This document shows, one piece after another, positions 13,356 to 50,521 of a DNA stretch of 64,000 nt; position 1 is the first letter of the stretch, and each line of letters begins with the position of its first letter. A program made the position numbers and the translations under genes. Location of the stretch: positions 214,989 to 278,988 of IMG/VR virus record IMGVR_UViG_3300047322_001237. The stretch is one strand, 5' to 3'. The notes below the pieces were generated by a model. That model searched no databases. It was not told the origin of the DNA and saw only the letters and a list, made by a program, of their open reading frames with translations.

Positions 13356-13363
13356 GTGATATA
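13356..13363 (-). promoter_or_regulatory. putative phage early promoter motif TATATCAC
   Basis: About 93 bp upstream of the lipoprotein start; same motif as upstream of the core early-type genes. Confidence 0.45.
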
Positions 13364-13380
13364 ACTCTTTAGGAAAAAGA

Positions 13381-13421
13381 CAAAAGAAAAACGGCCTGGG
13401 AAAACCCAGGCCGCTATGCCC
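13381..13421. terminator. hairpin CGGCCTGGG-AAAA-CCCAGGCCG with A-run on the left and CTATGCCC on the right
   Basis: Perfect 9-bp stem. The minus strand gives a T-rich tail after the 13438-13968 gene. Confidence 0.75.
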
Positions 13422-13437
13422 TCAAGAGGGAAGGGGA

Positions 13438-13968
13438 TCAGTCGAAGCTATAACGCACGACTTCCTTGAGCGGGAGAATGCCGATCATCTTGCCGGACCC
13501 GCAACCCGCTACCTCGCGAAAGAGGCGCACGTAGTTGGTGTCGATGTCCTCTTCCTCGCACCATGCGAAAAAGGAGATTGGATCGATCAGGCCAACGTTG
13601 CGCTCAGACGTCCGCCATTCGCTCAGATCGCGACGGACACGATGAGCGAGCGTACTGCCGATCGAGATCTTGCGACCGTCGAACGTGGTGAGTTCATCCA
13701 TAGCGTCCAGACTGCCTTCCACAGGAAGCACGCCATTGATCAAGCAGCAAGCCATGAGGCCCGACCAGACTTTTAGCTTTAAGTAGCGAGCGACCAACAG
13801 AATTTGATCGGCTGCAGATTGCACGTTATCAATACGCGCAACTGAAACGGACGGAACGAGTACGACACCTTTTGCGTCCGTCGTTTTTTCTGCAAGGTAT
13901 TCGCGAAGTTCGACGAACGCCCGTTGGTTTGCGGCGAGGCTGTCCTCGCCAAATGAAGAATGGCCCAT
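13438..13968 (-). CDS. hypothetical protein
   Basis: 176-aa ORF, co-oriented with 13981-14301. Confidence 0.6.
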   Translation of the reverse strand: MGHSSFGEDSLAANQRAFVELREYLAEKTTDAKGVVLVPSVSVARIDNVQSAADQILLVARYLKLKVWSGLMACCLINGVLPVEGSLDAMDELTTFDGRKISIGSTLAHRVRRDLSEWRTSERNVGLIDPISFFAWCEEEDIDTNYVRLFREVAGCGSGKMIGILPLKEVVRYSFD

Positions 13969-13980
13969 GGTATCTGTACC

Positions 13981-14301
13981 TTATTTGATCTCATCGCCCA
14001 TGCAGGCAACGAGCGATGGATGGATGAATGCGAGCTGTGTCGTGGTGAAAAGAATGTCGCGTTGGTCGTGTTTGCCGCTTTGCGTGGCCGTTGAGATCAA
14101 AGACTCCGAAAGGTCCTCCACGAGCACGAGATCCTTTTCAGACCAGACAAGCTTGTAGACTTCTGTTTGTTCCTTGATGTAATTGGTGAGTACCGACAGA
14201 TACTCGGCCGCAGCTTTGATCTCAGCCGCGCAGGTCGGCGGATCCAGAAGCAGCATATTCAACACGGTGCGCTGTGTAGCGCTGAACCGCTTTTCACGCA
14301 T
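13981..14301 (-). CDS. hypothetical protein
   Basis: 106-aa ORF with GAGAG upstream. Confidence 0.55.
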   Translation of the reverse strand: MREKRFSATQRTVLNMLLLDPPTCAAEIKAAAEYLSVLTNYIKEQTEVYKLVWSEKDLVLVEDLSESLISTATQSGKHDQRDILFTTTQLAFIHPSLVACMGDEIK

Positions 14302-14405
14302 GATTTTACTCTCTCAGGTTGAGCCGTTCTCGGGATGCTACTAATGGTCGATGCCACCGACCCCTCAAGCAAGCGGGACTTCAATACTCCGCGTTGCTCA
14401 AGGGC

Positions 14406-14413
14406 GTGATATA
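14406..14413 (-). promoter_or_regulatory. putative phage early promoter motif TATATCAC
   Basis: About 105 bp upstream of the 14301 start. Confidence 0.45.
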
Positions 14414-14437
14414 AGGCTGAAACTTTTTAGGATCGGC

Positions 14438-14485
14438 AAAAAAAAAAACTAAACGGCATAACTGCCAGAGGTTTCCCCCTGGCAG
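14438..14485 (-). terminator. GAAA-loop hairpin + TTATGCCG + T-run
   Basis: Minus strand: CTGCCAGGGG-GAAA-CCTCTGGCAG, then TTATGCCG and TTTAG followed by a long T-run. Confidence 0.85.
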
Positions 14486-14499
14486 CGACAACCACGGCG

Positions 14500-14940
14500 C
14501 TACGCCGCTTTCTGCACCAGCTCCGGCGCGCGGTGGGTACCGCGGTTCGGCAGCTTTTCTTCGACCAGGAACGTCTGGATGTCCTGGCATGCTTGATACA
14601 GTTCCGACAACTCGTACTCGTATCCGGTCAGGAATTCGAGTCCGTCTTCGAGGCACTGGTGGTGCTTGAAGAGGTCGGTCGTTTGCTCATAGTCCGTCAA
14701 AAAGACACTGAACACATTGCGATCCGTCTCGCAGATCCAGGCATTGCGGCAGCCGAAATGACGGCCTCCCGGATGCTTCTCGACGAACATCTTTAAACGC
14801 GTGACGCGCATGGTCCGCTCAGTGTGCTGAGTGATATGCGTGTTGCCACGGGGGGACCCCTGATGTTGGAACATCAGATACAGCATTTCAACGATAGCGG
14901 TCCCGACGGGGGTGATGCGATTAACGACAACGCGATTCAT
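14500..14940 (-). CDS. hypothetical protein
   Basis: ORF downstream of the helicase; GAGGA RBS spacing favours the ATG at 14940. Confidence 0.55.
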   Translation of the reverse strand: MNRVVVNRITPVGTAIVEMLYLMFQHQGSPRGNTHITQHTERTMRVTRLKMFVEKHPGGRHFGCRNAWICETDRNVFSVFLTDYEQTTDLFKHHQCLEDGLEFLTGYEYELSELYQACQDIQTFLVEEKLPNRGTHRAPELVQKAA

Positions 14941-15113
14941 GCTTGACATTCCTCGTTATAATTTTGTTGTTTAGCTGCTGTTCAAGTGAAACTCGTAAGA
15001 AAAGCTACTATCGATCGAGTGCGAGCGACCCGACCCCGTATGGCCTTTATTGTTTTTTTGGTTGTTGCCGGTTTTTGATTCGTTTGCTACCTATCCTTGA
15101 TTAACCTCCTCGC

Positions 15114-16709: not shown

Positions 16710-18701
16710 TTATGCGCCGTTACGTTCCAGATGCTCGAAGACCTCGCGCGGACAGAGCGCGACGTCAAACGGGTGATCCATCCGGTTGGTACTGATGAAG
16801 CTGATCGGGTCGGTGATGGCTTCGCGGTGATCCTCGAAAGCCATCGTCGCGGAAAGCGAACGCGACAACATCGAAAGCGACATCACACCGAGACCTTCAT
16901 CGGTCCAAGGCTTCGGCAAGCTGTAGTCGCCGTCCTCCGCCGAAACAATCATCGCTTCGTAGAGAACGACATCAAGCACTGTGAGGTTCACGTCAAGCTT
17001 GCTGTTGACCAGGTCGTACAGTTCGATCAGGGCGTCATCCGGCCTGACGTTCTTGTCCCGGTCTTGCATCATCTTGACGCTCGACTCCAACATCTTCGCG
17101 ATGTCACGCGAATGGTCCGACATGTTGAAGTGCTTGAGGGGAAGCGCCAGAATCGGCAGCGACCAGTCCCAATCCCTCATATCGATGACGTAATTCCCGG
17201 TTTCCGTATCGAGATCCCAGCCGACGCGCCGAATGTGATGCAAGAGCGAATGCGTCATCGAAGCTTTCCGACCGCTCACCGCCGTCAGGATGTCGACGCC
17301 TTCCGCCTTCCCGTATTCGCCGACCAACAGCCCCACGTACTCGAGCTCCGAGAAGCGCGCGATGTTGAGATTGTCGGGATCGTCGATCTCGTTCACGTCG
17401 TTCAAATTCGGTGCAGACTCCGCCGCGATCACCAGCTTCACCGGCAAGTCCTTCAACCGATCCGCCATGAGATACGAGTTGTCGTCCGACCCCACCTTCA
17501 GGTACAGCTTGTCCGCATCCCGCAAGACGATGGCCTCGATCGATGCCGAGCTGTCCAAGTGCTTAACCGACAGCACGGACTGCGACGACTTCTCGGTCAG
17601 CAACATGCAACACATGTGACCGATGTTCGTGAAATCCGGCACCGAGTTGGCGAGTTCGCCGAAGCACGTCGAGCACACGCCGACAGGATCGGGATGTGCG
17701 CATCGCATGACCGAGCGAACCCGAACCGTCTTACCGACCAGATGCTCGTCCCCCTTGCGGAGGATCTTGAGCTTGTTCTCCTTTTCGTCCAGATAGAACT
17801 TGCCGGCGAGACGCCCCAGGTCCTTCTTGCGCATCGGCCACTTCACGTACTTGGTCGTACCGCAATCCCCCTTATGCAGGTTCTGCACGTTCATGGACAT
17901 GAGCTGCAGACGACGCGAGAAGTACTCGGCCTGCTGCAACGGCGCCTTCGAGAAGATCAGCGATTTCGCGGCCGAACGGGATTCGACCAGCGAGTCGCGG
18001 AAGTTCCGATAGCCTTCGGTATAGCTGCGCAGAATCGGCAGCTCGAAGACGTTCGAGTCGATCTCGGTGACGCGACCGCGAGCGGACACGCACTGGAGCA
18101 ACTGATCGAACTTCACCGTACCCGCACGCGCGGCAAGCGCGAGCGGATTCTTCTTCAGATCGACGCCGCCCTTGATCACTGCGCCGACGGCCTGATAGCT
18201 GTCCTCGAGCATCTTGTCCGTGACCTTCTCCAAGGGCACCGAGAACAACGGCTTCTTCGCCTCAATGATCTTCGGATGGTCGAGCATCTCGATGAAGTCA
18301 GTGATGTCGAGCGACACCACGTATTCTTCGAGTCGGTACGAGAGCTCGTTGTACATCTCGTTCGTGATCTCGTACGTGCGCTTGGCCAGTCGGTCGAGCG
18401 TGACTGCCGGATCGCCGTGATAGGCGTCAAACGTATCCCACACCACGCTGGCGAGCAGATCCAGGTGCGTGTTGGAGCCGAGGCGCTTGTCACCCAGCAC
18501 CGAGAGAACGTGATGCTTCTTCAACACCGGCGTCTGGGGAAACTCGCGGTGGAACTGCCAAACGTATGAGCTGTAGATGGTCGAGCGGAAGTCGACCTCC
18601 ATTTCCCCGTCGTCGAACACACAGATGAACGACCCCCAGAGCGAATTCCACAGATCCTCTGTGCTCATTCCGATGAGAGTGCGCGCGCTGATGCGTCTCA
18701 T
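16710..18701 (-). CDS. non-virion RNA polymerase beta' C-terminal subunit (phiKZ gp74-like)
   Basis: Bridge-helix-like AEYFSRRLQL, DCGT, Zn-binding C..CSTCFG and NIGH; position next to the beta subunit. Confidence 0.88.
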   Translation of the reverse strand: MRRISARTLIGMSTEDLWNSLWGSFICVFDDGEMEVDFRSTIYSSYVWQFHREFPQTPVLKKHHVLSVLGDKRLGSNTHLDLLASVVWDTFDAYHGDPAVTLDRLAKRTYEITNEMYNELSYRLEEYVVSLDITDFIEMLDHPKIIEAKKPLFSVPLEKVTDKMLEDSYQAVGAVIKGGVDLKKNPLALAARAGTVKFDQLLQCVSARGRVTEIDSNVFELPILRSYTEGYRNFRDSLVESRSAAKSLIFSKAPLQQAEYFSRRLQLMSMNVQNLHKGDCGTTKYVKWPMRKKDLGRLAGKFYLDEKENKLKILRKGDEHLVGKTVRVRSVMRCAHPDPVGVCSTCFGELANSVPDFTNIGHMCCMLLTEKSSQSVLSVKHLDSSASIEAIVLRDADKLYLKVGSDDNSYLMADRLKDLPVKLVIAAESAPNLNDVNEIDDPDNLNIARFSELEYVGLLVGEYGKAEGVDILTAVSGRKASMTHSLLHHIRRVGWDLDTETGNYVIDMRDWDWSLPILALPLKHFNMSDHSRDIAKMLESSVKMMQDRDKNVRPDDALIELYDLVNSKLDVNLTVLDVVLYEAMIVSAEDGDYSLPKPWTDEGLGVMSLSMLSRSLSATMAFEDHREAITDPISFISTNRMDHPFDVALCPREVFEHLERNGA

Positions 18702-18752
18702 TTGTTTTCCTTGTTAAGCGGCCCGGCCGATGAGCTGGCCGGGCGGTCGTCT

Positions 18753-21002
18753 TCAATGAGTGAGTGCTGCTTGCTGTTTTGCCAGGTTGCCGCTACGGCC
18801 TTTCCAAGACGGCGAGTAGGGTCGATAGACGAACTGGACGCCAGCGCACGCGAGGATGTGCTTGACCAACTGCAACGGACGCGAGTTGCCGTACGGGATG
18901 ACCGAACGATCAACGGCGTTGTGGATATTGGTCGGCTCGTCTGCATCGAGAATCGCGTTACAGACCATCTCGTGCGTTTGCGGATTGTTGTTGCGATCCA
19001 TGACCTCGGCCGATGCCCGCGGTCCAACGTACGATGCCAAGATCCGCTTTTCCGCCTCGCCCCATGCACGAATCGACTGTGCACGGTAGGGCAGGGCGTA
19101 CTTGTCGGCGTTGGTCACCTGAGACAGGACACCGTAGTGCTGAACCTTGCCCGACGACACGGCCGTCCAGTCGTCCGCGATCTTTTCCAGCAGGATGATG
19201 TACACGCTGCCAATCCGCACCGGGACCTTGGTCGTCACGCGTCGACCAGAGTTGCCGACGTAAGTCACGGGACCGTACGTCGACGGATAGTTGGCTTCGA
19301 GCATCCGAACGATGTCACTCGACTCGCGCGGGTTGTTCGTCGGCAGATGCAGATAGATGCCGTTGCGAATCACCTGAGCCAGGTGTTCCGCACGCGTCTT
19401 CAGATACGCACCACCTTCAAACCACGAGTGCATGACAGGTGCCACGATTTCGTAGTAACCCATCAGGTAGTTCCACGCGTGATCGAACACCGGCTTGTTG
19501 CTCGCCTCGAGTTCCTGCGCCTTCGCCAATGCCTGACGATCGTTCTCCGCGATGCCGAACCATGCACGAATCTGCTTGGCCACGTCACGCGAATGTGCGT
19601 TGATGTAGATCTCGTACTTGCGGCCGAGATTCATCCGCGACACCGTCGAGTTCGGGTCCATCACGATGTCTGCACGATTGCCATCCGCGTCGACCGGCAT
19701 GTGATCCGCGGGCACGACGTTACAGATCACGCCCTTACCACCGTGCGTGTCGGTCAGCTTGAAGCCGATCGTCGGCGTGACGTCGTACTCGATCGTGAAC
19801 TCGATGCGCCAGTCATCCAGCGGAGCCTTGCGATACAGCTTGTAGATGCGCTCCTTGGATTCCTGGACCACGGACAGGGCTTCGACCACGAGACGATGGA
19901 ACTCCGGCGTCAGACGCAGGGACTCCTTGCGCTCGCGCTCAAGGCGTCGCCATTCGTAAACGATGTCCGAGTAAAACTGACGACGCGCCCGATCGTAACG
20001 ATCAGCCTGAGCATCCATGCCGATCGGCGTCGGCGAGTTGTTCGCCTGCGTATCGTGATGAACACGGATGTCGATCACCCGGCCGCCTGCACCGTCTGCG
20101 TAGATCATCTTGTCAAAAACGTGATCGATCTCCATCAGGTCGTACGTGCCTTGCTCGACGATCGCCAACTCGCGGTCGTAGCTTTTCGGATCCTTGTCGT
20201 GCGGACGCAGTGCCATCAGCACGCCGTCTTCACGAACGAATTCACCGATGTCCGGGAACGCCTTGAAGTTGTCCTCGTCACCGTACAGATTCAGCGGGTA
20301 GGCCTTGGCGCCAAATTCGACGACACGCGTCTCGTACTTCTTGAAGCCGAATTCTTTGAGCACCTCCGCGCTGATCATGATGCCGTCCTCAGAGGTGGCC
20401 GGATGACTCATGTACGCGATGTTGCATTCACGCCCGTACTTGTAGCCGCCCGTATCCGTCACAGAGGGAGAATCCGTGAGGATCGTGTCCGCCTTCAGAT
20501 AGCTGCCCACGCGGATGTCGGAAAGCGAAGGCTTGATCGCGTTCCGGAACCCGAAGTAGCTGTGATACGACGTGTGCGTCGTGATGTTGATGCAGCCGAT
20601 CTCCTTCGTGTGCACGTTCTCGTAAATGAGCACGCTGTGCGGGTTGTCCTGGCGGCGCTTGAGCACCGTGTCCTGTCCGAACGTTTCGCGATAGCGGTCG
20701 ATCACCTTGATCACTTCGCAGTCGACCGGCACCTTCGTCGAGAAGGTGTACTTGCCGAATTCACGTTCCGTGCCGCTCTGGCAGCGGCGCTCGGTCGAGC
20801 CCTTGATCACGAGACATTGACCGACGTGCGACGAAAACATCTGTTTGCGGGCAGCCGAGTTATGGCCGTCCCACGGGTTCAACCCGCAAACGTTCATGAG
20901 CTCCGGGTCCAGCTCATTCGGTTCTTCCAGCAGAACACCCGAGCGACGAATCGCGGATGTCATGGGCTTGATGCTCGCAGTCAGACTGGCGGTGTCCATC
21001 AT
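18753..21002 (-). CDS. non-virion RNA polymerase beta subunit (phiKZ gp71-73-like)
   Basis: RpoB-like motifs SEDGIMIS, GFKLTDTHGGKGVI and DIVMDPNSTVSRMNLG. Confidence 0.92.
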   Translation of the reverse strand: MMDTASLTASIKPMTSAIRRSGVLLEEPNELDPELMNVCGLNPWDGHNSAARKQMFSSHVGQCLVIKGSTERRCQSGTEREFGKYTFSTKVPVDCEVIKVIDRYRETFGQDTVLKRRQDNPHSVLIYENVHTKEIGCINITTHTSYHSYFGFRNAIKPSLSDIRVGSYLKADTILTDSPSVTDTGGYKYGRECNIAYMSHPATSEDGIMISAEVLKEFGFKKYETRVVEFGAKAYPLNLYGDEDNFKAFPDIGEFVREDGVLMALRPHDKDPKSYDRELAIVEQGTYDLMEIDHVFDKMIYADGAGGRVIDIRVHHDTQANNSPTPIGMDAQADRYDRARRQFYSDIVYEWRRLERERKESLRLTPEFHRLVVEALSVVQESKERIYKLYRKAPLDDWRIEFTIEYDVTPTIGFKLTDTHGGKGVICNVVPADHMPVDADGNRADIVMDPNSTVSRMNLGRKYEIYINAHSRDVAKQIRAWFGIAENDRQALAKAQELEASNKPVFDHAWNYLMGYYEIVAPVMHSWFEGGAYLKTRAEHLAQVIRNGIYLHLPTNNPRESSDIVRMLEANYPSTYGPVTYVGNSGRRVTTKVPVRIGSVYIILLEKIADDWTAVSSGKVQHYGVLSQVTNADKYALPYRAQSIRAWGEAEKRILASYVGPRASAEVMDRNNNPQTHEMVCNAILDADEPTNIHNAVDRSVIPYGNSRPLQLVKHILACAGVQFVYRPYSPSWKGRSGNLAKQQAALTH

Positions 21003-21080
21003 GCGTATTCCTTGTGAAGATGCTTGAATTTGTTATCAGTGTTTTCCACTCTGATAAAGCAGCTGCGCCGCTTCAGAGTA

Positions 21081-21088
21081 GTGATATG
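21081..21088 (-). promoter_or_regulatory. putative early promoter motif CATATCAC
   Basis: 78 bp upstream of the nvRNAP beta start. Confidence 0.55.
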
Positions 21089-21121
21089 TAACCGTGATTC
21101 TTTTGAGACGGATTTCTAACA

Positions 21122-21490
21122 ATGGCCTCAACTTCCAGCACATCCAGCAACGCGATTAATGCCCTCATGTTCGATCCGGGACCGACCGTCTTTTACACAG
21201 ACGGCTTTCGCCAGGTGCTCGAAGACCACATGACGTACCTGCGCCAACATCAGTCGACGCAGCTCATGTCCGTGAGTCCTCAGGCTGCCTGGGAAAACGA
21301 TCAGGATCTGTTTGGGTTCTTGCAGGTGGTCAACTTGGCGCCGCAATACCACTGGGTGACCATGCGGATGAACAACTTCTCATCACCAGCGGAATTCGGC
21401 ACAGGCGTCACGCAACTACTTATCCCTTCAAGCGTTGTCCTCGAACAACTGCGTTCCGCCTACATGACCAGTAATGTCTTGACGGCGTAA
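21122..21490 (+). CDS. small conserved phiKZ-like protein on the opposite strand
   Basis: 122-aa ORF ending at a bidirectional terminator. Confidence 0.7.
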   Translation: MASTSSTSSNAINALMFDPGPTVFYTDGFRQVLEDHMTYLRQHQSTQLMSVSPQAAWENDQDLFGFLQVVNLAPQYHWVTMRMNNFSSPAEFGTGVTQLLIPSSVVLEQLRSAYMTSNVLTA

Positions 21491-24621: not shown

Positions 24622-26184
24622 TTAGAAGCTCCTTGATGCCAGCGCAATGGAGAGTTGCGCCAGTTTGATTTTGATGTTGCCGGGCACGGCGTAGTAGCGG
24701 TCGTGCTGATTCCCAGTGAGTTGTCCAACCCACTCGGCGGGCAGCGTGAGACGCCAGTCGTGCTCGCTTAACTGCTTAGAAATGAGATCGATCGCAACTT
24801 CGGCCGAGGTCGGGAGTCGCGGAGCTTTCTGCTTACCGGGTTGACGACGGGGATGCTTGTACAGCGCTGAGAGCTGGTCGATCATCGGCGCGGGGATCTT
24901 CGCCTTCGAATCGCTACTCGTCAGGTGCATTACGTCCTCGTTCGATCGTGCGATTGCACTCACGAGGCCGGCGAGCTCGGGATAGCCCTTGTGCCAATAA
25001 ATGGCTTGCGCAGCTGCGATGGCCTGAAGCTTGGAAGAGATCTTCAGGTGATGGATACCACGCGGCTGCAACTGCCGATGACTCTTCAGCGCAAACATCA
25101 CGAGAAGCGTCTGCGGCTTGTAATGGATCTCGTTCTCGAGCGCCTTCACGGTCTCGAAGGACATGTCCAGAAATTCCGAGGGCATGTCCGGCGCGATCTG
25201 CTGCGCAATGTGACGCATGTCGCGCGCGTACATCCGGATAGGCGCGATCTTGCCTTCCGCAACGGGCAGCTTGACCTTGCAGCTTTCGAGCTTGGACTGC
25301 TGGTTCTCGGTGTCCTGGTTCTGACCCTCGACTTTCTTTTCCTTCACGATTCCGCTGAAACCGCTATCGGAACCGCCGCGCGTCTTGTACTTGATGAAGT
25401 TGAAGATGCGGCTCACCAAGTGCGAGTTCGGATCGACACCGCGCACGTCGCCAAAGGCGAGCTTGCGAACAAGCACCTGACCCATGATCAACGCAGGAAA
25501 GTCTTCGACGCTGATGCCCTTGAAAATGTGCGCGCTATTGGCGACGTCCATCTTCTTCGGGTCACTCGGAATCATCGATTCCACGTACGTGCGCAGTCGC
25601 TCCATGTGCACCGATTGCGCCATGCGAGTTTGCGACAGCAGCTGATACGCGTGGAACTCTTTCCAATTGGTGCCGCATTCTTCCTTCACCTGCGCGATGA
25701 ACTCGCCCCAGATCGGGAAAATGACGCGCAATGCGACGGAGATCGCGATGAGCCAACCATAATCTTCGCGCAGATACGTTCCTTCACGCGTGCCCGGCAT
25801 CTCGTGCATGACGAAATGCTCCTTGAGGTCTGCCGGGTAGTAGATGTTCGCGTGAAAGTCGATCCAGTGCTTGATGTCTTCGAGCTCATGCAGCTGGTAA
25901 AGCTTGGCCACCAATTCGTACAGAAAGAGGGTCAGTTGGTTCGTGTCGTAGTACATCCCGAACACGTCCTTGACCTGACGGAAGATCGAGAAAATTTCGT
26001 TCTGCCGCTCCATCGGCAGATGTTTCCAGAACGCGTTGATCTGCTCGAAGATGTCGTATTCGAGGTCCTTAATTATGCCTTTGAACTCGGAGATATTCCA
26101 TTCAATACTCTGCCCCTGATGCGAAAGCGTCACTTCGGTACGACTGTTGTCAACCAGCCCGATTTTGCTGATCTGCAGTTCCAA
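24622..26184 (-). CDS. non-virion RNAP specificity subunit (phiKZ gp68-like)
   Basis: About 520 aa at the gp68 position. Probable TTG start 7 nt after AAGGAG (the ORF track start is 26205). Confidence 0.72.
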   Translation of the reverse strand: MELQISKIGLVDNSRTEVTLSHQGQSIEWNISEFKGIIKDLEYDIFEQINAFWKHLPMERQNEIFSIFRQVKDVFGMYYDTNQLTLFLYELVAKLYQLHELEDIKHWIDFHANIYYPADLKEHFVMHEMPGTREGTYLREDYGWLIAISVALRVIFPIWGEFIAQVKEECGTNWKEFHAYQLLSQTRMAQSVHMERLRTYVESMIPSDPKKMDVANSAHIFKGISVEDFPALIMGQVLVRKLAFGDVRGVDPNSHLVSRIFNFIKYKTRGGSDSGFSGIVKEKKVEGQNQDTENQQSKLESCKVKLPVAEGKIAPIRMYARDMRHIAQQIAPDMPSEFLDMSFETVKALENEIHYKPQTLLVMFALKSHRQLQPRGIHHLKISSKLQAIAAAQAIYWHKGYPELAGLVSAIARSNEDVMHLTSSDSKAKIPAPMIDQLSALYKHPRRQPGKQKAPRLPTSAEVAIDLISKQLSEHDWRLTLPAEWVGQLTGNQHDRYYAVPGNIKIKLAQLSIALASRSF

Positions 26185-26225
26185 AACTGATCTCCTTAGG
26201 AACATTAACTACGGAACTTCAGGGA

Positions 26226-26239
26226 GGTGATATATCACC
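26226..26239. promoter_or_regulatory. perfect 14-bp palindrome GGTGATATATCACC (early promoter motif / possible operator)
   Basis: Self-complementary; lies about 40 bp upstream of the gp68-like start. Confidence 0.6.
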
Positions 26240-26338
26240 GAAGCTAGTTTCAATGCGATCTGGGGTCAAAGAACCGGTCAAGCCCCACAGCCTGACCGGT
26301 TCCTCAACTAACTCAGCATTTCAACTGCCTTAACCTGC

Positions 26339-33086: not shown

Positions 33087-33193
33087 CGTGTTCTCCTTGC
33101 TTGGTGCAACTGCTTGATTGGGGATCGTGTTGCTACGTTGCTGCTTACGATTGCTGGGGGAAATAAAATTCGCCTTGCAATCTATTCACGGTA

Positions 33194-33201
33194 GTGATAT
33201 A
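33194..33201 (-). promoter_or_regulatory. putative early promoter motif TATATCAC
   Basis: 107 bp upstream of the beta' N-terminal start; context AGTGATATATCGCC. Confidence 0.55.
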
Positions 33202-33431
33202 TCGCCAAGTTTCGTTTCAACCGTCTGGAAACCGGCGTCATCTGCGATGCTTAAGGCTGCACCGACTTCTCCTCCTCAGGCGTCTCATCGAGGAGCGCGA
33301 CGTTCGAGGAGGTGCCGCGAAGGAGCCAAGCAATCGTGATTGCCAACACCAACCAACCTGCACCAAACAACATCCAAGCGTTCATCTTGTTTCTCTTATT
33401 GCTCGCGGTGGTCTATCCGCGTTGCATGAAC

Positions 33432-33524: not shown

Positions 33525-35492
33525 TTACTGGTTGGACCAGCGGCTGAAGCCAGCGCGGGCGCCGTACTGCTGTTGTTGCGGGTGCGCGAAGCCGCGGTTG
33601 AACACCGAGCCGTTCATCGAGCCCGTATCCAGACCAGCCGACACTGCGTACGGGTTCACCGCGCGCTCGTACTGGTTCAGATCCGTCATCGGGGCGATGG
33701 TGCGCACCGACAGACCCGTGTCCTTGCATGCGTTCAGCAGCGCGACGATGAACGCCGGCTCGAAAGTCACGCGGCGTGCGAAGCCGGTGAACTCGACGTT
33801 GTTCTTGCCGAGGATGCCTTCGATGATGTGCTTGCGCTTCGCCAGACGAACTTGCAGGTCCAGGTTCGTGCGTGCGAACGTATCCGACCATTCGCGTGCA
33901 ACTTCCGGATCGCGATCGCCGACCATGTTGAGCACGGCCAGGTAGTCGATCTCGCGGAGGTCGCGCTTCACGCCGTGACGGTCGACGTACCAACCCAGGT
34001 GGATGCGGTTGAATTCGTCGGACGCCACGCGGCCGCCGGCCTGGAAGTAACGGCTGAAGTTGCCGTGCGTGAGCACGTTCGCCGCGCGGATGATGATTTC
34101 ATTCGCTTTCTGCCAGTTGTTGCCGCTCAGCTCAGCAGCTGCTGCGAAGATGCCGTTGAACCAGGTCTGCGGACCGCACTCGGGCACGTCCAGCGAGAGG
34201 ATGAGCTTCGGCGTGATGACCGAGCCAACCAGACGCAGGAGGTGGTCGCTCGTCTGACCTTGACCGCGCTGGAACGCATCCGACTTCGTGTCGACGCGCG
34301 AGCCGAAGCCGTTCGGGTTCTTCTCGAAGTTCGCTTCGATGCCGATGGCGCCGATGTCCTTCCAGTCGATTTCCGCGCTGTTGCTCATCGGTGCCGGACG
34401 GAATGCCTCGACCCATGCGTGGTTGTCGGCCAGCGTGAACGCCGTCACGAGCGCCAGCAGCTGCGCCGGAATCGTGAGCAGCTTGACCGACTCGAGATCG
34501 GTCATCACGAAACGCGGACGGTAGCGCTTGAACTCGTCCGGCGACGACGGCTGAGCCGTCTGCTGGACCCACGGGTCGAAGCGTTGCGTCTGCTGTTCGG
34601 TCGGCGCCCACACGAGGTCCATGTAGCCGCTGATGCGCGAGATCTGCGACACACGCTGGGTCACGCCTTGCTGGCCCGGGATTTCCTGCCCGCCTGCGCG
34701 GAAGTCGATGACGATGTCCGAACGGATCGGTGCGCCGACCATGTCACGCGACTGGCCGTTGCCGAACGTCGGCTGAACGGTCAGCGAGTTCTCTTGCTCG
34801 ACGGTGCCCAGGTCCAGGTCCTGGAAGCCGCCCGGCTGACGCACTTCGAGTTCGGTCTGGCACGCCGTTGCAGCGTTCGCTGCCAGCTCGTGAACCAGCG
34901 TCACGTCGTCGACGTTGAAGTCACGCGGCACCACGCATGCGTCCACCGGCCAAATCGGCATGCCCGGGAACGTGCGCGACACGGCGGCGAGCACTTCGTC
35001 CGACAGCGTCTTGTTGTTGACGTCGCCGGTCACGCGCAGGATTTCCGTGTTCGTGTTGTTGATCATCTGGTACGCGACCTGCAGCGGCTCGCTCGAGCCT
35101 TCCAGAATCAGGGTGTGACATGCCACGCCCGTTTCCTTGTTCATCAGGTCACGCATCGCGACGACGATCACCGACTTCACGAGCGACTGCGTGTTGTTGT
35201 AGTCGATCGGGATGAGCGTGACTTCGTAGCTCTTGTCGACGCCGGCGAACACTTCGGTCAGTGCCTTCTCGAGTTTCGTGATGACTTCGCTCTGCGGATT
35301 GCGACCCATGGCGGCACGCGAGAGGCTGCCCAGGTCGGACAGGCGGGTGCGTTGCGTCGGGCGCTGCGCTGCGCTCGGGGCGGCTTGCTGCTGGGCTTGC
35401 GCCGACTGCTCCATCTGACGGCTGAATGCAGCGCCCATCGAGGTTTCTGCTGCTGCGCCTTGCTTGCTGCCGTTGGTGTTGTTCACTGCCAT
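33525..35492 (-). CDS. chmA: chimallin, phage nuclear shell protein
   Basis: 655 aa directly upstream of the NADFDGD subunit. Segments FVMTDLE, LSLDVPECGPQTW, IDYLAVLN and GFARRVTFEPAFIVAL match my recollection of ChmA; disordered termini. Confidence 0.85.
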   Translation of the reverse strand: MAVNNTNGSKQGAAAETSMGAAFSRQMEQSAQAQQQAAPSAAQRPTQRTRLSDLGSLSRAAMGRNPQSEVITKLEKALTEVFAGVDKSYEVTLIPIDYNNTQSLVKSVIVVAMRDLMNKETGVACHTLILEGSSEPLQVAYQMINNTNTEILRVTGDVNNKTLSDEVLAAVSRTFPGMPIWPVDACVVPRDFNVDDVTLVHELAANAATACQTELEVRQPGGFQDLDLGTVEQENSLTVQPTFGNGQSRDMVGAPIRSDIVIDFRAGGQEIPGQQGVTQRVSQISRISGYMDLVWAPTEQQTQRFDPWVQQTAQPSSPDEFKRYRPRFVMTDLESVKLLTIPAQLLALVTAFTLADNHAWVEAFRPAPMSNSAEIDWKDIGAIGIEANFEKNPNGFGSRVDTKSDAFQRGQGQTSDHLLRLVGSVITPKLILSLDVPECGPQTWFNGIFAAAAELSGNNWQKANEIIIRAANVLTHGNFSRYFQAGGRVASDEFNRIHLGWYVDRHGVKRDLREIDYLAVLNMVGDRDPEVAREWSDTFARTNLDLQVRLAKRKHIIEGILGKNNVEFTGFARRVTFEPAFIVALLNACKDTGLSVRTIAPMTDLNQYERAVNPYAVSAGLDTGSMNGSVFNRGFAHPQQQQYGARAGFSRWSNQ

Positions 35493-35567
35493 GGTAGTTT
35501 CCTTTTCTTTTCTAAATCAGGTTAATGATCGCGCGAACACTAATCTTTTCTGTCTAGTGTCAGGGTG

Positions 35568-35575
35568 GTGATATG
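35568..35575 (-). promoter_or_regulatory. putative early promoter motif CATATCAC
   Basis: 75 bp upstream of the chmA start. Confidence 0.55.
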
Positions 35576-36681
35576 TGCCTGAAACTATTTAGAATCAGCG
35601 TCGCCGAAGTCTTCTTGCGGACGTGTCTAAGCACTCCTCAACGAGGAGAAAAACTGTCAACGGGGATTACGGGGTTGCCGGAACGGCGGATGTCTCTCGA
35701 CAGGCCGTCGGGTCAGATTGGTTAGATCTTCTCCTACAACATATACCGAATGCCGTAAATTTTTACTGCTGTTGGGTCTTCAGTCTCGATTAACGTAGCG
35801 CGTGTGCGTGGTCGGTATGTTCGCGGTAAGTCGGTTGGTATTTTTGCAGTTGGGCAGTGCGCAGGGGGCGTTCGAATTTCTTTAGATGTGCAGCGAAAGC
35901 AGGGTCGACAGTTCAGCAGATAAGTAGTTGTAACATGGCGGTCAAAGTTACCTACGGGTTAACGCGTAGTGCACCGTGAACGAGCACGCACTTTACTCCT
36001 TATCTGAGACAAACTGTGTCACGAAATCAAAATATTTTATTGCTATCTTTGGCTCTAAAGAATCATAATGAAAGGTAGCTTTCGAATGTGACCCTTAGCC
36101 CGGCTGAGCATTCGTAAAACAAGGGGATCATCTGCTCGCGAAGCTTTCAGCCCATGTTTCAAGGGGGTTGCGTTGTTGCGCTGCTTGCACACTCTTAAAC
36201 GATCGTTGACAAAACTGCGATTTGTCCTACTTTTGAGTAGGTGTAATGCACGACTAAGAATCGGCGGTGCACGGATATAGTGCAGTGATTATTACGATTT
36301 CCCTACGTGCGCGCGATCGGAATCGCCGCGAAAAACTTGAGCGCCAAATGGTCGCTGTCAACAAGAAAAGTTACACGTAGCGGTAAAAGGTACCTTATCG
36401 GACACAGCAATTGATCGTGACGAACGTCCCGCTTTGAGCTATCTTGACGCCGCCTCGGGCTATCGCCTCAGCCCATTCCCGGTCTGTCATATTTGCGAAT
36501 AGCCCATATCGAATGTTCCGAATCAGTTCACCGTAAAACACCGGATGGGAGTATCGGTCGGATTGTTTTGGCCTGTCCGCATAATCGGCGCGATTATCCG
36601 AGATTCTGCTTATCGGCCTGCGCCGACTAACCGAATCGTTAATCCCGACTCGCCTCTCCCGTATCAAATTTCGTTTCGCCA

Positions 36682-45413: not shown

Positions 45414-45415
45414 GA

Positions 45416-46992: not shown

Positions 46993-47456
46993 GTGAAGAG
47001 GAGGGCGGTGTCGATGTAATAGCCGATGTACAGATCAGAGCCGCGCAGTTGCACGCTCAAAGTCTGGTCGTCGTAAATCAACGGCACCTTTATTAGCTGT
47101 CGGACTAACAGGGATATGGGGTAAGGCAAGACGTTCGCGAGCTGATCGTGAAGCGCGCTGTAGACCGAACGCTCGCGGCTGTGTCCTTGCACGGACAGTC
47201 CATAGCAGTTTTCGATCTGATGCGCGATGGTCCACTCCACCGTATCTTCGACCGACGCGCCTGCGAGGCAGACGTTGTCTAGTTCGAATATTTCCAGCAA
47301 CGGCGGGACGATGGCCGCGACGAACTCGCGAACATCCTGAATGAGGGTGGCTTGTCGAAACACTTCTGGCTCCTGGTCTCTACACGATTTGACGTGGAGA
47401 TATAAACTTCCCAGCGCGAGCGCGTCCTGGGCGTTTCTGAGCCGTTCTAGAGGCAT
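46983..47456 (-). CDS. hypothetical protein, tandem paralog-like family
   Basis: C-terminal LRGSDLYI. Confidence 0.6.
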   Translation of the reverse strand: MPLERLRNAQDALALGSLYLHVKSCRDQEPEVFRQATLIQDVREFVAAIVPPLLEIFELDNVCLAGASVEDTVEWTIAHQIENCYGLSVQGHSRERSVYSALHDQLANVLPYPISLLVRQLIKVPLIYDDQTLSVQLRGSDLYIGYYIDTALLFTWP

Positions 47457-48332
47457 TCCGAAACCTAAGACCCGGCATGATACACGTTTGCACTGTGCTC
47501 CTCGGGTTACAGAAGGGGTGCGAAAGTAGGGGCACAGTTCAGGCCCGACGAATTGACGGCATAAAAGGAAATAAGGGCCAACTCCCTCCTCGCGTAATGC
47601 GATCCTGGGGAGCTGGCCCGTTGCTCTGCTGTAACCCGGCTGAGCAGTTCGGGGCAGACGCTCTATGCTTCTATCCCGCTGAGCAGTTGGGATGCCATCA
47701 CGACGACGTGCAGACAGTGAATCAGCAATTAGGCCAGCACTAGCCCGCGCGCTGCCTTGGTGACGCGAGTCGATGCTCGTGTCAGGCCCGCGCGGCCGCG
47801 TAGGTGGACGCTATATGTTCCAGACTGAATGCGGAATGTCTTACCACTCACTAGAGGGTCACTTGGATGGATGGCTTCAGTCAATCGGACTGGTAATGGA
47901 AGCGTGAGCTAAACCTATTTCTTCATGATGCCCTCGCAAATGTAATCGCAGATTTTGATCGGAATCCAGTCTCGGAATGGTCCCCGCGCGCGGCGTGCGC
48001 CAACACGCGCGTAGCGAGTAAGGAGACTGGGGCAAACGCATGGGTCGAAATCAGGTAATGAGCGCCTTGTCCAAACCACCACCCCTGGCAGCCTGAAGAA
48101 GTCAACCGCTAGATTGATCGAAACCTAAACTACTACAGCCTAAGTTTGTTGCACTGAATTCGTCCCATGCGACTACCGGCGCCAAGGTAGCGTGGGCATG
48201 ATGTCCAAACGCGGGCCTCACATTGTGTTAGCTCACCATCACGCCCAACGGGCAGCGGCGCGTCATTGCGCGCCAACGCCCTAATGCCGCAGCGCGGGTG
48301 CCAATACCCGCAAGCGGCGCGCGCCGGTTGAA

Positions 48333-48587
48333 TCAGATCGTGACCGTGGCGTTGGTCGCGACGTAGTCGACGATGTTCTGGATGGTCTTGAAGGCCTCCG
48401 CTTCCTCGTCGAGGATCTCGATACAGAATTCGTCTTCGATGGCCATTACCATCTCGACTTCATCGAGGGAGTCAGCGCCGAGGACTTCGACAATCGTGTC
48501 TTCGTTCTTGATGTCCTTGACCGGCACCTGAAGCTGAGCCGACACGATGGCTTTGACACGTTCTTCAATCTGCTGTTTATCGCTCAT
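48333..48587 (-). CDS. acpP: acyl carrier protein
   Basis: LGADSLD phosphopantetheine site; closely follows the AcpP pattern (ERVKAIV..QL...EDEF.IEI.DEEAE...TIQ..VDY). GGAG RBS. Confidence 0.92.
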
Positions 48588-49225
48588 GCTTGCTCCGTAG
48601 ATGTGGTGAACGACTGAGGATTTTCACCTCCGGCCCTTTTCCAGACTGCTGCTATGCCCAAACCGGTGAGGCGTGCTCGTCTAGCCCGGTACCGCGCGTA
48701 CCGGCTCGTGGTCGTTCGTAACTGTTGATGTTGGTTTGGAATACGCTCAAAACGAACGCATTCCAAACCCGCCGTACTCGGCGTGTTGGGATCGCCCCGT
48801 CCTCCGCGTTAGCGGATCCTGCGGGAACGACCGGTTGGTTCTCACTGAACCTCGATCGATGCGACAGTGCCTTGGACCTCATTCGGAACGCGCACCCCTT
48901 GATCACAGGGGAATGGGCGAACTCAAGTCTCGTGTCAGCTCACTTCGCGATGACCAGCTTCCTTATAAAGAAGCTCTTTGTTGTTCGATGTCAGGTGAGA
49001 AATCTGGCAGGCGGACTCGTCATGTCCCTGGGCAATCCCGCCAGAGCGTGGGGTCCATACGACCTCCTTTTGATCGCGGTATCCGGCTCTTTAGGGCGTG
49101 CAGTTAGCTTGGGGACGAACGCGCGCATGTGCACGTCATGCGCCGTCTTTGACGAGTATCCGAGATTGCGAAGGATCCAATGCGCAGGCGTGAACCAGAG
49201 CACGCGAACCAGATCCCGCCACCAG

Positions 49226-50224
49226 TTACAACACCAGGCCGGTATCGGTAGCCTGATCAGCACTGCTGGAGATGCCTCCCTTGCGCAGACGGGCAGCCGT
49301 CTGCTCGTTCATGTCGTCCAGCACTCGGTGCAGGTCGGCGGCGACGTCGGCGAATACGCCGTCCGACGTCACGAAGTGACACGGCGCCTCGAGGTCGAGT
49401 TGGTCGGAAGCACCGTCGAGGTAGCCGACGTATTGCACTTCCGGACGCAGCGACAGGTTCGGATCGACACCAGTGGTCGTAAGCGTCGCGATGCTGATGA
49501 GGTTGCCGATCTTGCCGAGATTCGTCGCGTTCAGATCTTCGATGAGCGTAAGTGCGGTGAGCATCGGCTTGTAGGATGTGACCTTCTGGTAATGCAGCCA
49601 GTGGTACAGATCCTTCGAGTCGAGCTCACGGTTGCGACGCGAGAACAGCAGGCAGAGGGCCGCGACGATATGCTGAATGCGCTTATCGACGACCGAGCGC
49701 GTCATTTCCGCGCTGTTCTGCAGGTACGTCACGACTACCGGCTCCTGACGCACCGACGCGATCTGATCGTACGACTTGAGCGTGTTCAGCGTGTTTTCGG
49801 TGTACTTCTTCGTGCTGTCGTCGCCGACGCAGATGACGACGGTCGGATAGTCCTTTGCGAGGAGTTCCGAGACGATCGACGGCGCGATCACAGAACCGGA
49901 ACCGCCACCGCCCGACGACAGGACGATGTTCAGGTCGACCGGCTTGAAGGTCTGCAGGATGTCGCGCACGCGCTCGCTGATGGCGCCGTGATTTTCGCGG
50001 CGCACTTGACCCGAGCCGTCGAGGCCGTCAATCAGATAGACGCTTTCCGCCTTGATGTCCGAATGAAGGTTCGACTTCGACGTGTCGATGTACACGACGT
50101 CCAGTTGCGCGAACGTTTCATCGCTGCTTTTCGCGACGTCCTCGACCTTGTGGCCCATGTTAATGCCAGCGCCGCCGCACGCGTAGAGTCGCACGCGACC
50201 GCGTTCACGTTCATGCGTAGTCAT
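49226..50224 (-). CDS. phuZ: phage tubulin PhuZ
   Basis: CGGAGIN, IDTS, tubulin signature GGGGSGS and a short acidic C-tail (DQATDTGLVL). About 332 aa; ATG at 50224 after AAGGA. Confidence 0.93.
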   Translation of the reverse strand: MTTHERERGRVRLYACGGAGINMGHKVEDVAKSSDETFAQLDVVYIDTSKSNLHSDIKAESVYLIDGLDGSGQVRRENHGAISERVRDILQTFKPVDLNIVLSSGGGGSGSVIAPSIVSELLAKDYPTVVICVGDDSTKKYTENTLNTLKSYDQIASVRQEPVVVTYLQNSAEMTRSVVDKRIQHIVAALCLLFSRRNRELDSKDLYHWLHYQKVTSYKPMLTALTLIEDLNATNLGKIGNLISIATLTTTGVDPNLSLRPEVQYVGYLDGASDQLDLEAPCHFVTSDGVFADVAADLHRVLDDMNEQTAARLRKGGISSSADQATDTGLVL

Positions 50225-50507
50225 GTTTCGTGTTCCTTGGGGTTGTGACTTGTGGTTGGTCATAACAAGTCTGAGGGGGATAAAAAATATCCGAGCGTCA
50301 GGGCGAGGGAACGTCGCGCGGTCCACATTCCGGACAAACGCAATTCTGCTTCGGAAGATCCGTTGTCTCGCACCGATCGATCAGTTCATGCCGATCGCTA
50401 CTTACTTCGGGTGGCGTGGTGACATCCACGAGAGCCTCACCGGTATATTGCGCCATCGTGCTTCTCCTTGAAGGAAATCATTTGATTAGTACGGCGTACC
50501 TCAAGTA

Positions 50508-50521
50508 GGTGATATATCGCC
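50508..50521 (-). promoter_or_regulatory. near-palindrome GGTGATATATCGCC containing the early promoter motif
   Basis: Between the divergent phuZ and 50554 genes. Confidence 0.55.

What the first reader, a model, noticed from the sequence alone, without database searches (positions are those of the whole stretch)
13356..50521. Near-palindromic (T/C)ATATCAC motif upstream of early-type genes: early promoter and possible repressor operator
Seen: GTGATAT(A/G) on the + strand at 13356, 14406, 21081, 26227, 33194, 35568 and 50509, each upstream of a minus-strand gene (lipoprotein, accessory ORF, nvRNAP beta, gp68-like, beta', chimallin, PhuZ). Established, from memory: the phiKZ early promoter consensus is TATATTAC, one base different. 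Unusual here: several copies are dyad-symmetric (GGTGATATATCACC perfect; GGTGATATATCGCC; AGTGATATATCGCC), and the half-site resembles the lambda operator half-site TATCACC. Inference: one dimeric repressor could shut the whole early programme, giving a lysogeny switch.
Basis: partly seen in the sequence, partly recalled or inferred. Interest (0 to 1): 0.7.

Follow-up and report, generated by a model that had tools for sequence, protein, structure and literature searches.

The report
Early promoters of a nucleus-forming jumbo phage
The repeated (T/C)ATATCAC motif is the core of the early promoter that a soil jumbo phage's injected RNA polymerase most likely uses to switch on its first genes, as in phage phiKZ; the palindromic copies are explained by chance, so there is no sign of a repressor site or a lysogeny switch.

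Summary
GTGATATR occurs 9 times in the window against 1.4 expected.

The 8-mer is the core of a roughly 50-bp element: GATTSWAA, then TCTCAGACA-YATAT(C/T/G)AC, then N5-TGA. The 279-kb genome, which IMG/VR and CheckV class as complete, has 20 clear copies and one weak copy. All lie in intergenic DNA, on the minus strand, upstream of minus-strand genes.

The genome is an uncultivated chimallivirus from a rhizosphere metagenome. It carries two RNA polymerase gene sets matching the phiKZ virion and non-virion enzymes. The motif precedes chimallin, all four non-virion polymerase genes in the window, PhuZ and many small ORFs. It is absent before the capsid, sheath and virion-polymerase genes.

The geometry is core-(6N)-G, with G invariant in 20 of 20 copies. 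This matches the published phiKZ and AR9 early promoters. A model built only from these sites finds phiKZ's own TATATTAC promoters before PHIKZ054 and PHIKZ068, and 21 same-strand sites in Burkholderia phage FLC9.

The operator and lysogeny idea is not supported:
- Only 1 perfect and 2 near dyads occur among 21 sites, no more than column permutation gives (P=0.27).
- The dyads are lost in more distant relatives.
- The XRE gene sits mid-operon and is absent from relatives that keep dyads.
- No integrase, resolvase or S24 peptidase was found.

Verdict: a new member of a known kind. No transcription start site data exist.

The parts
35554..35609 (-). Early promoter before chimallin. Core CATATCAC at 35568-35575; predicted +1 G at 35561; 5'UTR about 69 nt.
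   Evidence: PWM 47.6 bits; R1 33.4 bits, E 2.4e-9. Orthologous sites in G001, G002, G003 and FLC9. phiKZ has TATATTAC 80 nt before PHIKZ054.
33180..33235 (-). Early promoter before the nvRNAP beta' N-terminal gene. Core TATATCAC at 33194-33201; predicted +1 G at 33187. Imperfect dyad GGCGATATATCACT.
   Evidence: The dyad's left arm is replaced in relative L003/G003 (AGCCATATATCACT) while the core is kept.
26213..26268 (-). Early promoter before the gp68 orthologue. Core at 26227-26234; predicted +1 G at 26220. The only perfect 14-bp palindrome, GGTGATATATCACC, at 26226-26239.
   Evidence: Kept in G001 and G002; one mismatch in G003. phiKZ has TATATTAC 41 nt before PHIKZ068.
21067..21122 (-). 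Early promoter before the nvRNAP beta operon (beta, a beta'-like subunit, a helicase). Core CATATCAC at 21081-21088; predicted +1 G at 21074.
50495..50550 (-). Early promoter before a 52-aa ORF and PhuZ. Core at 50509-50516; predicted +1 G at 50502. Near-dyad GGCGATATATCACC.
   Evidence: The FLC9 site assigned to this promoter by downstream homology (projected offset 270 nt) has CCTATATTAC and no dyad.
14392..14447 (-). Early promoter before small ORFs (13981-14301 and onward). Core TATATCAC at 14406-14413; predicted +1 G at 14399. It follows a hairpin-TATGCCGT terminator.
4084..4139 (-). Core CATATGAC at 4098-4105; predicted +1 G at 4091. It precedes a 56-aa ORF (3871-4041).
   Evidence: PWM 37.9 bits; R1 27.7 bits.
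13342..13397 (-). Atypical or weak copy before the lipoprotein gene. Core TATATCAC at 13356-13363 and a G at +14 (13349), but the upstream element is about 10 nt out of register.
   Evidence: PWM 16.7 bits; not found by R1 at E<=1; lipobox seen.
14831..14838 (-). Intragenic CATATCAC. Not a member of the promoter family.
   Evidence: Lies inside a called gene (14500-14940) and lacks the flanking elements.
33525..35492 (-). Chimallin (nuclear shell protein) gene.
   Evidence: PF25677 E 3e-48; phrog_4795 E 6e-100; 44% identity to FLC9.
31557..33086 (-). nvRNAP beta' N-terminal subunit gene (gp55-like, next to chimallin as in phiKZ).
   Evidence: phrog_2987 E 3e-145; PF00623.
24622..26184 (-). nvRNAP fifth subunit gene, orthologue of PHIKZ068.
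   Evidence: phrog_3209; tblastn to PHIKZ068, 99% coverage, E 1e-38.
16710..21002 (-). nvRNAP beta (18753-21002) and a second polymerase subunit (16710-18701), in one operon.
   Evidence: phrog_3295 E 1e-228 and PF00562; phrog_3015 E 2.5e-188.
49226..50224 (-). PhuZ tubulin gene.
   Evidence: phrog_4733 E 2e-92; PF00091 and PF22334.
52064..52696 (-). It has a Lys/Ala/Pro-rich N-terminal tail and a C-terminal HTH_3 domain. It is the third gene of a four-gene operon and has no early motif or dyad upstream.
   Evidence: Absent from FLC9 and G003.

Best explanation
The motif is the core of the early-gene promoter of an uncultivated nucleus-forming jumbo phage (a chimallivirus; nearest cultured relative Burkholderia phage FLC9).

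The full element on the transcribed (minus) strand is GATTSWAA (about -35 to -27), then TCTCAG-ACA, then YATAT(C/T/G)AC (-14 to -7), then five variable bases, then T-G(+1)-A.

By analogy with phiKZ, AR9 and phiR1-37, the virion-packaged multisubunit RNA polymerase is injected with the DNA and recognises this element. It starts at the conserved G six bases after the core. It transcribes chimallin, the non-virion polymerase subunits, PhuZ and many small early ORFs without help from host polymerase or new protein synthesis.

Shown here: the motif, its genome-wide distribution and orientation, the gene content downstream, the presence of both polymerase sets, and conservation across phages. Inferred: which polymerase recognises it, the start site, and early timing.

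The palindromic copies are ordinary promoter variants. The consensus is already partly self-complementary (ATAT centre, A-1/T4, G-4/C7), so two substitutions make a perfect palindrome.
For: - The 8-mer is enriched: 9 observed against 1.4 expected.
- An iterated PWM finds 21 sites. All are on the minus strand, intergenic and upstream of minus-strand genes. No other position in the genome scores 5 bits or more, and shuffled genomes peak at 12.6 bits. Leave-one-out scores are 14.6-40.7 bits.
- ATAT, the A at -15 and the G at +14 are invariant in 20 of 20 sites.
- The geometry equals the published AR9 consensus AAATATATATTAT-(6N)-G+1 and the 'TSS 6 nt downstream' reported for phiKZ and phiR1-37 (PMC5312081). 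Reviews state that each RNAP-encoding jumbo phage has its own AT-rich early motif centred near -10 (PMC7598289). They also state that vRNAP transcribes chmA and the nvRNAP genes (PMC12908238).
- Downstream genes are chimallin, four nvRNAP genes and PhuZ.
- The genes matching the phiKZ vRNAP set (assigned by PHROG family, size and adjacency), the major head gene and the sheath gene lack the motif.
- Model R1, built only from these sites, finds phiKZ early promoters before PHIKZ054 (E 1e-5) and PHIKZ068 (E 2e-4). It also finds 21 hits in FLC9 and 7, 9 and 14 in three IMG/VR relatives, all on one strand per genome.
- Orthologous promoters keep the core, the upstream element and TG while the spacers diverge.
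- None of the sites meets sigma-70 criteria, and sigma-70-like sites are fewer than in shuffles.
- The phiKZ-type terminator motif is also present, which supports a phiKZ-like transcription system.
Against: - There is no transcript or start-site data. The genome comes from a rhizosphere metagenome, and no RNA run was listed.
- Recognition by the virion polymerase is by analogy only.
- The gene calls that define 'intergenic' come from my own simple caller.
- The 13356 copy does not fit the extended motif.
Confidence: 0.88

Rival explanations
1. One reading: the dyad-symmetric copies are operators for a dimeric phage repressor (the XRE protein, perhaps with H-NS) that shuts the early programme and permits lysogeny.
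For: - One perfect 14-bp palindrome and two near-palindromes overlap early promoters.
- The genome encodes one XRE-type HTH protein and an H-NS-like protein.
- The dyad at the gp68 promoter is kept in G001 and G002, and with one mismatch in G003.
- At least one perfect palindrome arises in only 7% of column permutations.
- IMG/VR labels relative G003 a 'provirus'.
Against: - Only 3 of 21 promoters are dyad-like, so a whole-programme switch is not possible through them.
- Total dyad content is 80 pairs against 77.8 +/- 2.7 in permutations, P=0.27.
- The genome has 23 perfect 14-bp palindromes against 19.8 +/- 3.9 in shuffles.
- The dyad is lost at the beta' promoter in G003 and at the PhuZ promoter in FLC9.
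- The XRE protein is absent from G003, which keeps dyads, and from FLC9. Its gene is mid-operon with no palindrome upstream. Its HTH is C-terminal with no recognisable dimerisation or S24 domain.
- No tyrosine integrase or serine recombinase was found in a genome rated 100% complete, nor any integrase in the relatives.
- The ends of G003 map inside the phage genome, and its unmatched 7.5 kb shows no clearly bacterial genes.
- The half-site orientation is the reverse of lambda operators (from memory).
Confidence: 0.04
2. The sites are strong host sigma-70 (or other host sigma) promoters, with TTGAAA as the -35 element and TATCAC or TATATC as the -10 element, used by host RNA polymerase for early genes.
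For: - Several copies have TTGAAA 15 bp upstream of TATCAC.
- The predicted start lies 6-7 nt after the core, as for sigma-70.
Against: - No site passes a sigma-70 scan that requires a 16-18 nt spacer, A at position 2 and T at position 6 of the -10 hexamer.
- The invariant final C, the AC at core positions 6-7 and the invariant +1 G are not sigma-70 features.
- Half of the sites have TCTAAA or TCCTAA in place of TTGAAA.
- The same extended motif occurs in phiKZ, whose development is host-polymerase independent (PMC7598289).
Confidence: 0.05
3. The motif is recognised by the non-virion polymerase, as a middle-class promoter, rather than by the virion polymerase.
For: No polymerase assignment can be made from sequence alone. 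In phiKZ some genes, such as PHIKZ054, carry both early and middle promoters (PMC8244752).
Against: - The motif precedes the nvRNAP genes themselves, which must be expressed before nvRNAP exists.
- It matches the phiKZ early consensus, not the middle (TACT plus A-rich) or late (TATG) consensus.
Confidence: 0.03

Closest known systems
phiKZ early (vRNAP) promoters, core TATATTAC with a TSS 6 nt downstream
   Same: - The core differs by one base (TATATCAC; CATATTAC also occurs at genome position 76504).
- Same upstream A/T-rich block and TTTCAGA/TTTGAGA stretch, and the same N5-TG start region.
- Same genes downstream (chimallin/PHIKZ054, gp68/PHIKZ068).
- A model built here detects the phiKZ sites.
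   Different: - The phage has 58% GC, so the motif stands out far more from its background.
- The dominant core has C rather than T at position 6.
- The upstream element is better defined (GATTSWAA).
- About 21 copies here against 32 reported in phiKZ.
- No experimental TSS here.
Bacillus phage AR9 early promoters, AAATATATATTAT-(6N)-G+1 (PMC5312081)
   Same: An AT-rich core followed by six bases and a conserved G start. Used by a virion-packaged multisubunit RNA polymerase.
   Different: AR9 is not a chimallivirus and has uracil-containing DNA. Its core is longer and entirely A/T.
Burkholderia phage FLC9 (cultured on B. glumae), predicted early promoters
   Same: Same extended motif, GATTSAAA...TTTCAGMCM-TATAT(T/A/C)(A/C)(C/T)-N5-TGA. 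There are 21 same-strand hits, including one before its chimallin gene.
   Different: FLC9 cores are more often TATATTAC, TATATAAC or TATATTCT. No GTGATATATCAC dyads were seen among the listed sites.
Lambda-type CI/Cro operators (half-site TATCACCGC)
   Same: The hexamer TATCAC(C) occurs.
   Different: - The half-sites abut and point outward from the centre, whereas in lambda TATCACC lies at the outer edge of a 17-bp site (from memory).
- There are no tandem operators and no divergent repressor/cro pair.
- There is no integrase and no S24 domain.

Membership tests
Early (virion RNA polymerase) promoters of phiKZ-like / RNAP-encoding jumbo phages | A highly conserved AT-rich core of about 8-10 nt, over-represented upstream of presumed early operons and co-oriented with them | tested here: met
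   21 of 21 sites are intergenic and co-oriented. The genome's next-best score is under 5 bits and shuffles peak at 12.6 bits. ATATCAC occurs in 12 upstream regions against 1.0 expected.
Early (virion RNA polymerase) promoters of phiKZ-like / RNAP-encoding jumbo phages | A conserved start nucleotide 6 nt downstream of the core, with the core centred near -10 | tested here: inconclusive
   G is invariant in 20 of 20 sites exactly 6 nt after the core, matching PMC5312081. The actual 5' ends could not be mapped, because no RNA run was listed.
Early (virion RNA polymerase) promoters of phiKZ-like / RNAP-encoding jumbo phages | The genome encodes both a virion and a non-virion multisubunit RNA polymerase | tested here: met
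   The second polymerase set (phrog_3148, 1452 aa, and phrog_2986, 541 aa) lies at genome 13243-19232. I assign it to vRNAP by family, size and adjacency. The nvRNAP set is in the window.
Early (virion RNA polymerase) promoters of phiKZ-like / RNAP-encoding jumbo phages | Drives chimallin and the nvRNAP genes, and is absent before virion structural genes | tested here: met
   Sites precede chimallin, beta, beta', the gp68-like gene and PhuZ. None precedes the major head, sheath or vRNAP genes.
Early (virion RNA polymerase) promoters of phiKZ-like / RNAP-encoding jumbo phages | Sequence relationship to experimentally mapped early promoters | tested here: met
   R1 finds the TATATTAC promoters before PHIKZ054 and PHIKZ068 and before the PHIKZ058.1 region, with E from 1e-5 to 3e-4, on the gene strand only.
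Early (virion RNA polymerase) promoters of phiKZ-like / RNAP-encoding jumbo phages | Transcription within minutes of infection, resistant to rifampicin and independent of new protein synthesis | not testable with these tools
   The phage is uncultivated and comes from a metagenome.
Temperate-phage repressor operators (lambda CI/Cro type) | Dyad symmetry beyond what the overlapping promoter consensus explains, present at the regulated promoters | tested here: not met
   3 of 21 sites are dyad-like. Column permutation gives P=0.27 for the total and 0.07 for at least one perfect palindrome. Palindromes are not enriched genome-wide.
Temperate-phage repressor operators (lambda CI/Cro type) | A cognate repressor gene next to the operators, usually divergent from a cro-like gene and autoregulated | tested here: not met
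   The only HTH_3 gene (52064-52696) is 1.5 kb from the nearest site. It is the third gene of a co-directional operon, with no dyad upstream.
Temperate-phage repressor operators (lambda CI/Cro type) | A lysogeny module (integrase or recombinase, or a repressor with an S24 autopeptidase) | tested here: not met
   PF00589, PF00239 and PF00717 give no match in a genome rated 100% complete, while the control genomes are positive. Plasmid-type partition genes were not searched.
Temperate-phage repressor operators (lambda CI/Cro type) | Operator conserved together with the repressor in relatives | tested here: not met
   G003 keeps dyad-like promoters but has no XRE homologue. FLC9 has neither. The dyad is lost at the orthologous beta' (G003) and PhuZ (FLC9) promoters.
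Bacterial sigma-70 promoters | TTGACA-like and TATAAT-like hexamers, with A at position 2 and T at position 6 of the -10 hexamer, and a 16-18 nt spacer | tested here: not met
   No motif site is called by the scan. Sigma-70-like sites number 2 and 4, against 7.2 and 6.1 in shuffles.

The most novel reading that the evidence does not exclude
A lineage-specific subclass of early promoters (GGYGATATATCACY, before the gp68-like gene, the beta' gene and PhuZ) might be bound by a phage-encoded DNA-binding protein. Candidates are the Lys/Ala-rich XRE protein and the H-NS-like protein. Such binding could tune or shut off non-virion polymerase and PhuZ expression after the early phase. This would be a temporal regulator inside a lytic chimallivirus, not a lysogeny switch.
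Probability: 0.05. Interest if true: 0.6.

Novelty: new member of a known kind. Interest (0 to 1): 0.25.

Why it matters
The result gives the early-promoter consensus and a map of 20-21 early transcription units for a previously uncharacterised, GC-rich soil clade of nucleus-forming phages that includes the cultured Burkholderia phage FLC9.

The whole promoter architecture is kept between phages whose chimallins share only about 25-45% identity and whose GC content differs by 20 points. That architecture comprises the upstream element, the core and the +1 G. The phiKZ-type terminator motif is kept as well. This argues that virion-polymerase promoter recognition is ancient and constrained.

It is useful for annotation, for predicting early genes, and for choosing templates for in vitro work. 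It does not open a new question, and it removes a tempting but unsupported claim of lysogeny in a chimallivirus.

Tried and rejected
- **RNA evidence.** Two run searches found only DNA metagenomes (rhizosphere, soil, plant) and listed no RNA run. No reads were laid, so start sites could not be mapped.
- **Megablast of the chimallin region against phages.** No match. Protein-level search was needed.
- **Pfam searches for the second polymerase set.** PF00562 and PF00623 found only the non-virion set. PHROGs found the second set.
- **A strict pattern in FLC9.** YATATCACNNNNNTG found only 2 sites. The profile model found 21, so FLC9 uses more varied cores.
- **PHROGs on first genes after promoters outside the window.** Ten of the 13 were searched, and most had no family, as expected for early accessory genes.
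- **The 'provirus' label on G003.** One end maps inside the phage genome. The last 7.5 kb has no homologue in G000, has phage-like GC, and contains only a ClpX-type zinc-finger protein and a weak, sub-threshold cupin match. No integrase was found. I treat it as a fragment and not as evidence of integration.
- **Hairpin-TATGCC as a late promoter.** Considered because it contains TATG. Rejected as the main reading. The sites sit 27-59 nt after stop codons, occur as bidirectional pairs between convergent genes, and match the published phiKZ terminator motif.
- **Complex prediction of XRE with the palindrome.** Not run.

Full report
**What the window is**

The window is the last 64 kb of a 278,988-bp single-contig virus record with 58% GC. 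IMG/VR classes the record as having direct terminal repeats, and CheckV rates it 100% complete. The two ends share an exact 127-bp repeat. The DNA is held by rhizosphere metagenome runs, and no RNA run was listed.

The window encodes the following genes:
- Chimallin: PF25677 and phrog_4795. Its best cultured relative is Burkholderia phage FLC9 at 44% identity.
- PhuZ.
- A non-virion RNA polymerase (nvRNAP) set. This comprises beta, a second large subunit, the beta' N-terminal part, and an orthologue of PHIKZ068.

A second polymerase set, matching the phiKZ virion enzyme (vRNAP), lies at genome 13243-19232: phrog_3148 (1452 aa) and phrog_2986. I assign it to vRNAP by PHROG family, protein size and adjacency. 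So this is an uncultivated chimallivirus with the two-polymerase system of phiKZ.

**Checking the observation**

GTGATATR has 9 matches in the window against 1.41 expected, and no shuffle reaches 9. All seven listed positions are correct, lie between genes, and precede minus-strand genes.

Aligning the copies on the minus strand shows that the 8-mer is only a core. Starting from the exact matches, an iterated weight matrix converged on 21 sites in the whole genome. Every site is on the minus strand, intergenic, and upstream of a minus-strand gene. Twenty score 30 bits or more. No other position in the genome reaches 5 bits, and shuffled genomes peak at 12.6 bits. Leave-one-out scores are 14.6-40.7 bits. 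An unseeded 7-mer scan of upstream regions also ranks ATATCAC among the most enriched words.

The element reads GATTSWAA, about five A-rich bases, TCTCAG-ACA, YATAT(C/T/G)AC, five variable bases, then TGA. ATAT, one upstream A and the G of TGA are invariant in 20 of 20 copies.

Within the window:
- There are seven canonical copies.
- The copy at 13356 has the core and the G, but its upstream element is displaced. It scores 16.7 bits and is not found by the profile model.
- The copy at 14831 is intragenic and unrelated.

**What it is**

Published work states three relevant things:
- Every RNAP-encoding jumbo phage has its own AT-rich early motif centred near -10 (PMC7598289).
- AR9 early promoters read AAATATATATTAT-(6N)-G+1, and phiKZ and phiR1-37 start 6 nt after their consensus (PMC5312081).
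- vRNAP transcribes chmA and the nvRNAP genes (PMC12908238).

The element here has exactly that geometry, core-(6N)-G. It sits before exactly those genes: chimallin, all four nvRNAP genes in the window via three promoters, and PhuZ. It also precedes many small ORFs without known families. It is absent before the vRNAP, major head and tail sheath genes.

In phiKZ itself, TATATTAC lies 80 nt before PHIKZ054 and 41 nt before PHIKZ068. The flanks are the same there: A-run, TTTGAGAT, core, N5, TG.

A sequence-only profile built solely from the 20 sites here gives these results:
- It recovers those phiKZ promoters with E from 1e-5 to 3e-4, on the gene strand only.
- It finds 21 hits in FLC9, all on one strand.
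- It finds 7, 9 and 14 hits in three IMG/VR relatives, again on one strand each.

Orthologous promoters keep the upstream element, the core and TG, while the spacers diverge.

None of the sites qualifies as a sigma-70 promoter, and sigma-70-like sites are rarer than in shuffles.

The genome also uses the phiKZ-type terminator, a GC hairpin followed by YTTATGCCGT. There are 39 intergenic copies, mostly 27-59 nt after a stop codon. Several sit just upstream of an early promoter. This matches the motif reported for phiKZ (PMC10914365).

Taken together, the early-promoter reading is well supported. The polymerase assignment, the start site and the timing remain inferences.

**The operator and lysogeny idea**

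The palindrome centre lies between core positions 1 and 2. The promoter consensus already supplies four of the seven complementary pairs: A1/T2, T0/A3, A-1/T4 and G-4/C7. Only positions -2, -3 and -5 must change to give GGTGATATATCACC.

- Across the 21 sites the number of complementary pairs is 80. Permuting columns independently gives 77.8 +/- 2.7 (P=0.27). At least one perfect palindrome arises in 7% of permutations, and two or more sites with at least 6 of 7 pairs in 24%.
- The genome has 23 perfect 14-bp palindromes against 19.8 +/- 3.9 in shuffles.
- Only three promoters are dyad-like, so a single repressor could not shut the whole programme through them.
- In relatives, the dyad at the gp68 promoter persists in G001 and G002, with one mismatch in G003. 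It is lost at the beta' promoter in G003 and at the PhuZ promoter in FLC9. A different promoter (beta) gains TTGATATATCAC in G003. This is the behaviour of freely varying spacer positions.
- The XRE protein has a Lys/Ala/Pro-rich tail and a C-terminal HTH_3 domain, with no other recognisable domain. Its gene is third in a four-gene operon, without a dyad or early motif upstream. It has homologues in G001 and G002 but not in G003 or FLC9.
- No tyrosine integrase, serine recombinase or S24 peptidase is found in the complete genome, and no integrase in the relatives.
- From memory, lambda operators carry TATCACC at the outer edge of a 17-bp site, reading inward. Here the two half-sites abut and read outward, so the resemblance is superficial.
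- The IMG/VR 'provirus' label on G003 is not backed by anything I could see.

**Novelty and score**

This is a new member of a known kind, the early-promoter consensus of a GC-rich soil clade of chimalliviruses. The modest point of interest is how completely the phiKZ promoter and terminator grammar is conserved at 58% GC. I put the early-promoter reading at 0.88, the repressor-operator and lysogeny reading at about 0.04, and overall interest at 0.25.

Noticed in passing
Genome-wide. Window examples (position of the TATGCC start): 3850 (+), 13415 (+), 14460 (-), 21542 (+), 33451 (-), 47563 (-), 55919 (+): A GC-rich hairpin immediately followed by YT-TATGCCGT. There are 39 intergenic copies with a stem of at least 6 bp. 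Most lie 27-59 nt after a same-strand stop codon. Some form bidirectional pairs around one hairpin between convergent genes. Several sit just upstream of an early promoter. This matches the conserved phiKZ terminator motif ...GGBYTTATKYYGT (PMC10914365).
   Followed up: partly
window 4174-4500 (+): A 108-aa protein with an H-NS C-terminal DNA-binding domain (PF00816, E 1e-14; phrog_10171). It is divergent from the early promoter at 4098-4105. An H-NS-like protein in a nucleus-forming phage may act on host or phage DNA.
   Followed up: partly
window 52064-52696 (-): An XRE-type protein of unusual build: about 140 residues of Lys/Ala/Pro-rich, histone-H1-like tail followed by a C-terminal HTH_3 domain. 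Its homologues in relatives G001 and G002 are about 65% identical where they align, far below the 96-97% of the polymerase subunit. It is absent from G003 and FLC9.
   Followed up: partly
genome 107285 and 182889 (outside the window; L017:8264-8319 and L024:6868-6923): Two early promoters are nearly identical over about 40 nt (core TATATTCC, then CGGCGTGAATC). They precede small ORFs of 143 and 85 aa. This suggests a recent duplication of a promoter-gene cassette.
   Followed up: no
contig ends (genome 1-127 and 278862-278988; window 63874-64000): The terminal repeat is exactly 127 bp, a common maximum assembler k-mer. It probably marks a circular assembly rather than the true physical terminal repeat.
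   Followed up: no
L059:7400-15000 (relative G003, IMGVR_UViG_2902759955_000002): IMG/VR labels this 172-kb relative a 'provirus'. Its last 7.5 kb has no homologue in this genome. That stretch encodes a ClpX-type zinc-finger protein, a protein with a weak cupin match below Pfam's cut-off, and several hypothetical proteins. No integrase was found, and the other end maps inside the phage genome.
   Followed up: partly
window 50299-50457 (-): A 52-aa ORF with a strong ribosome-binding site (AAGGAG) lies between the PhuZ promoter and the PhuZ gene. PhuZ is therefore the second gene of its early transcript.
   Followed up: no
window 13000-52999: Sigma-70-like promoter matches are fewer than in shuffled sequence (2 against 7.2, and 4 against 6.1). 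This is consistent with a genome that does not rely on host RNA polymerase.
   Followed up: no
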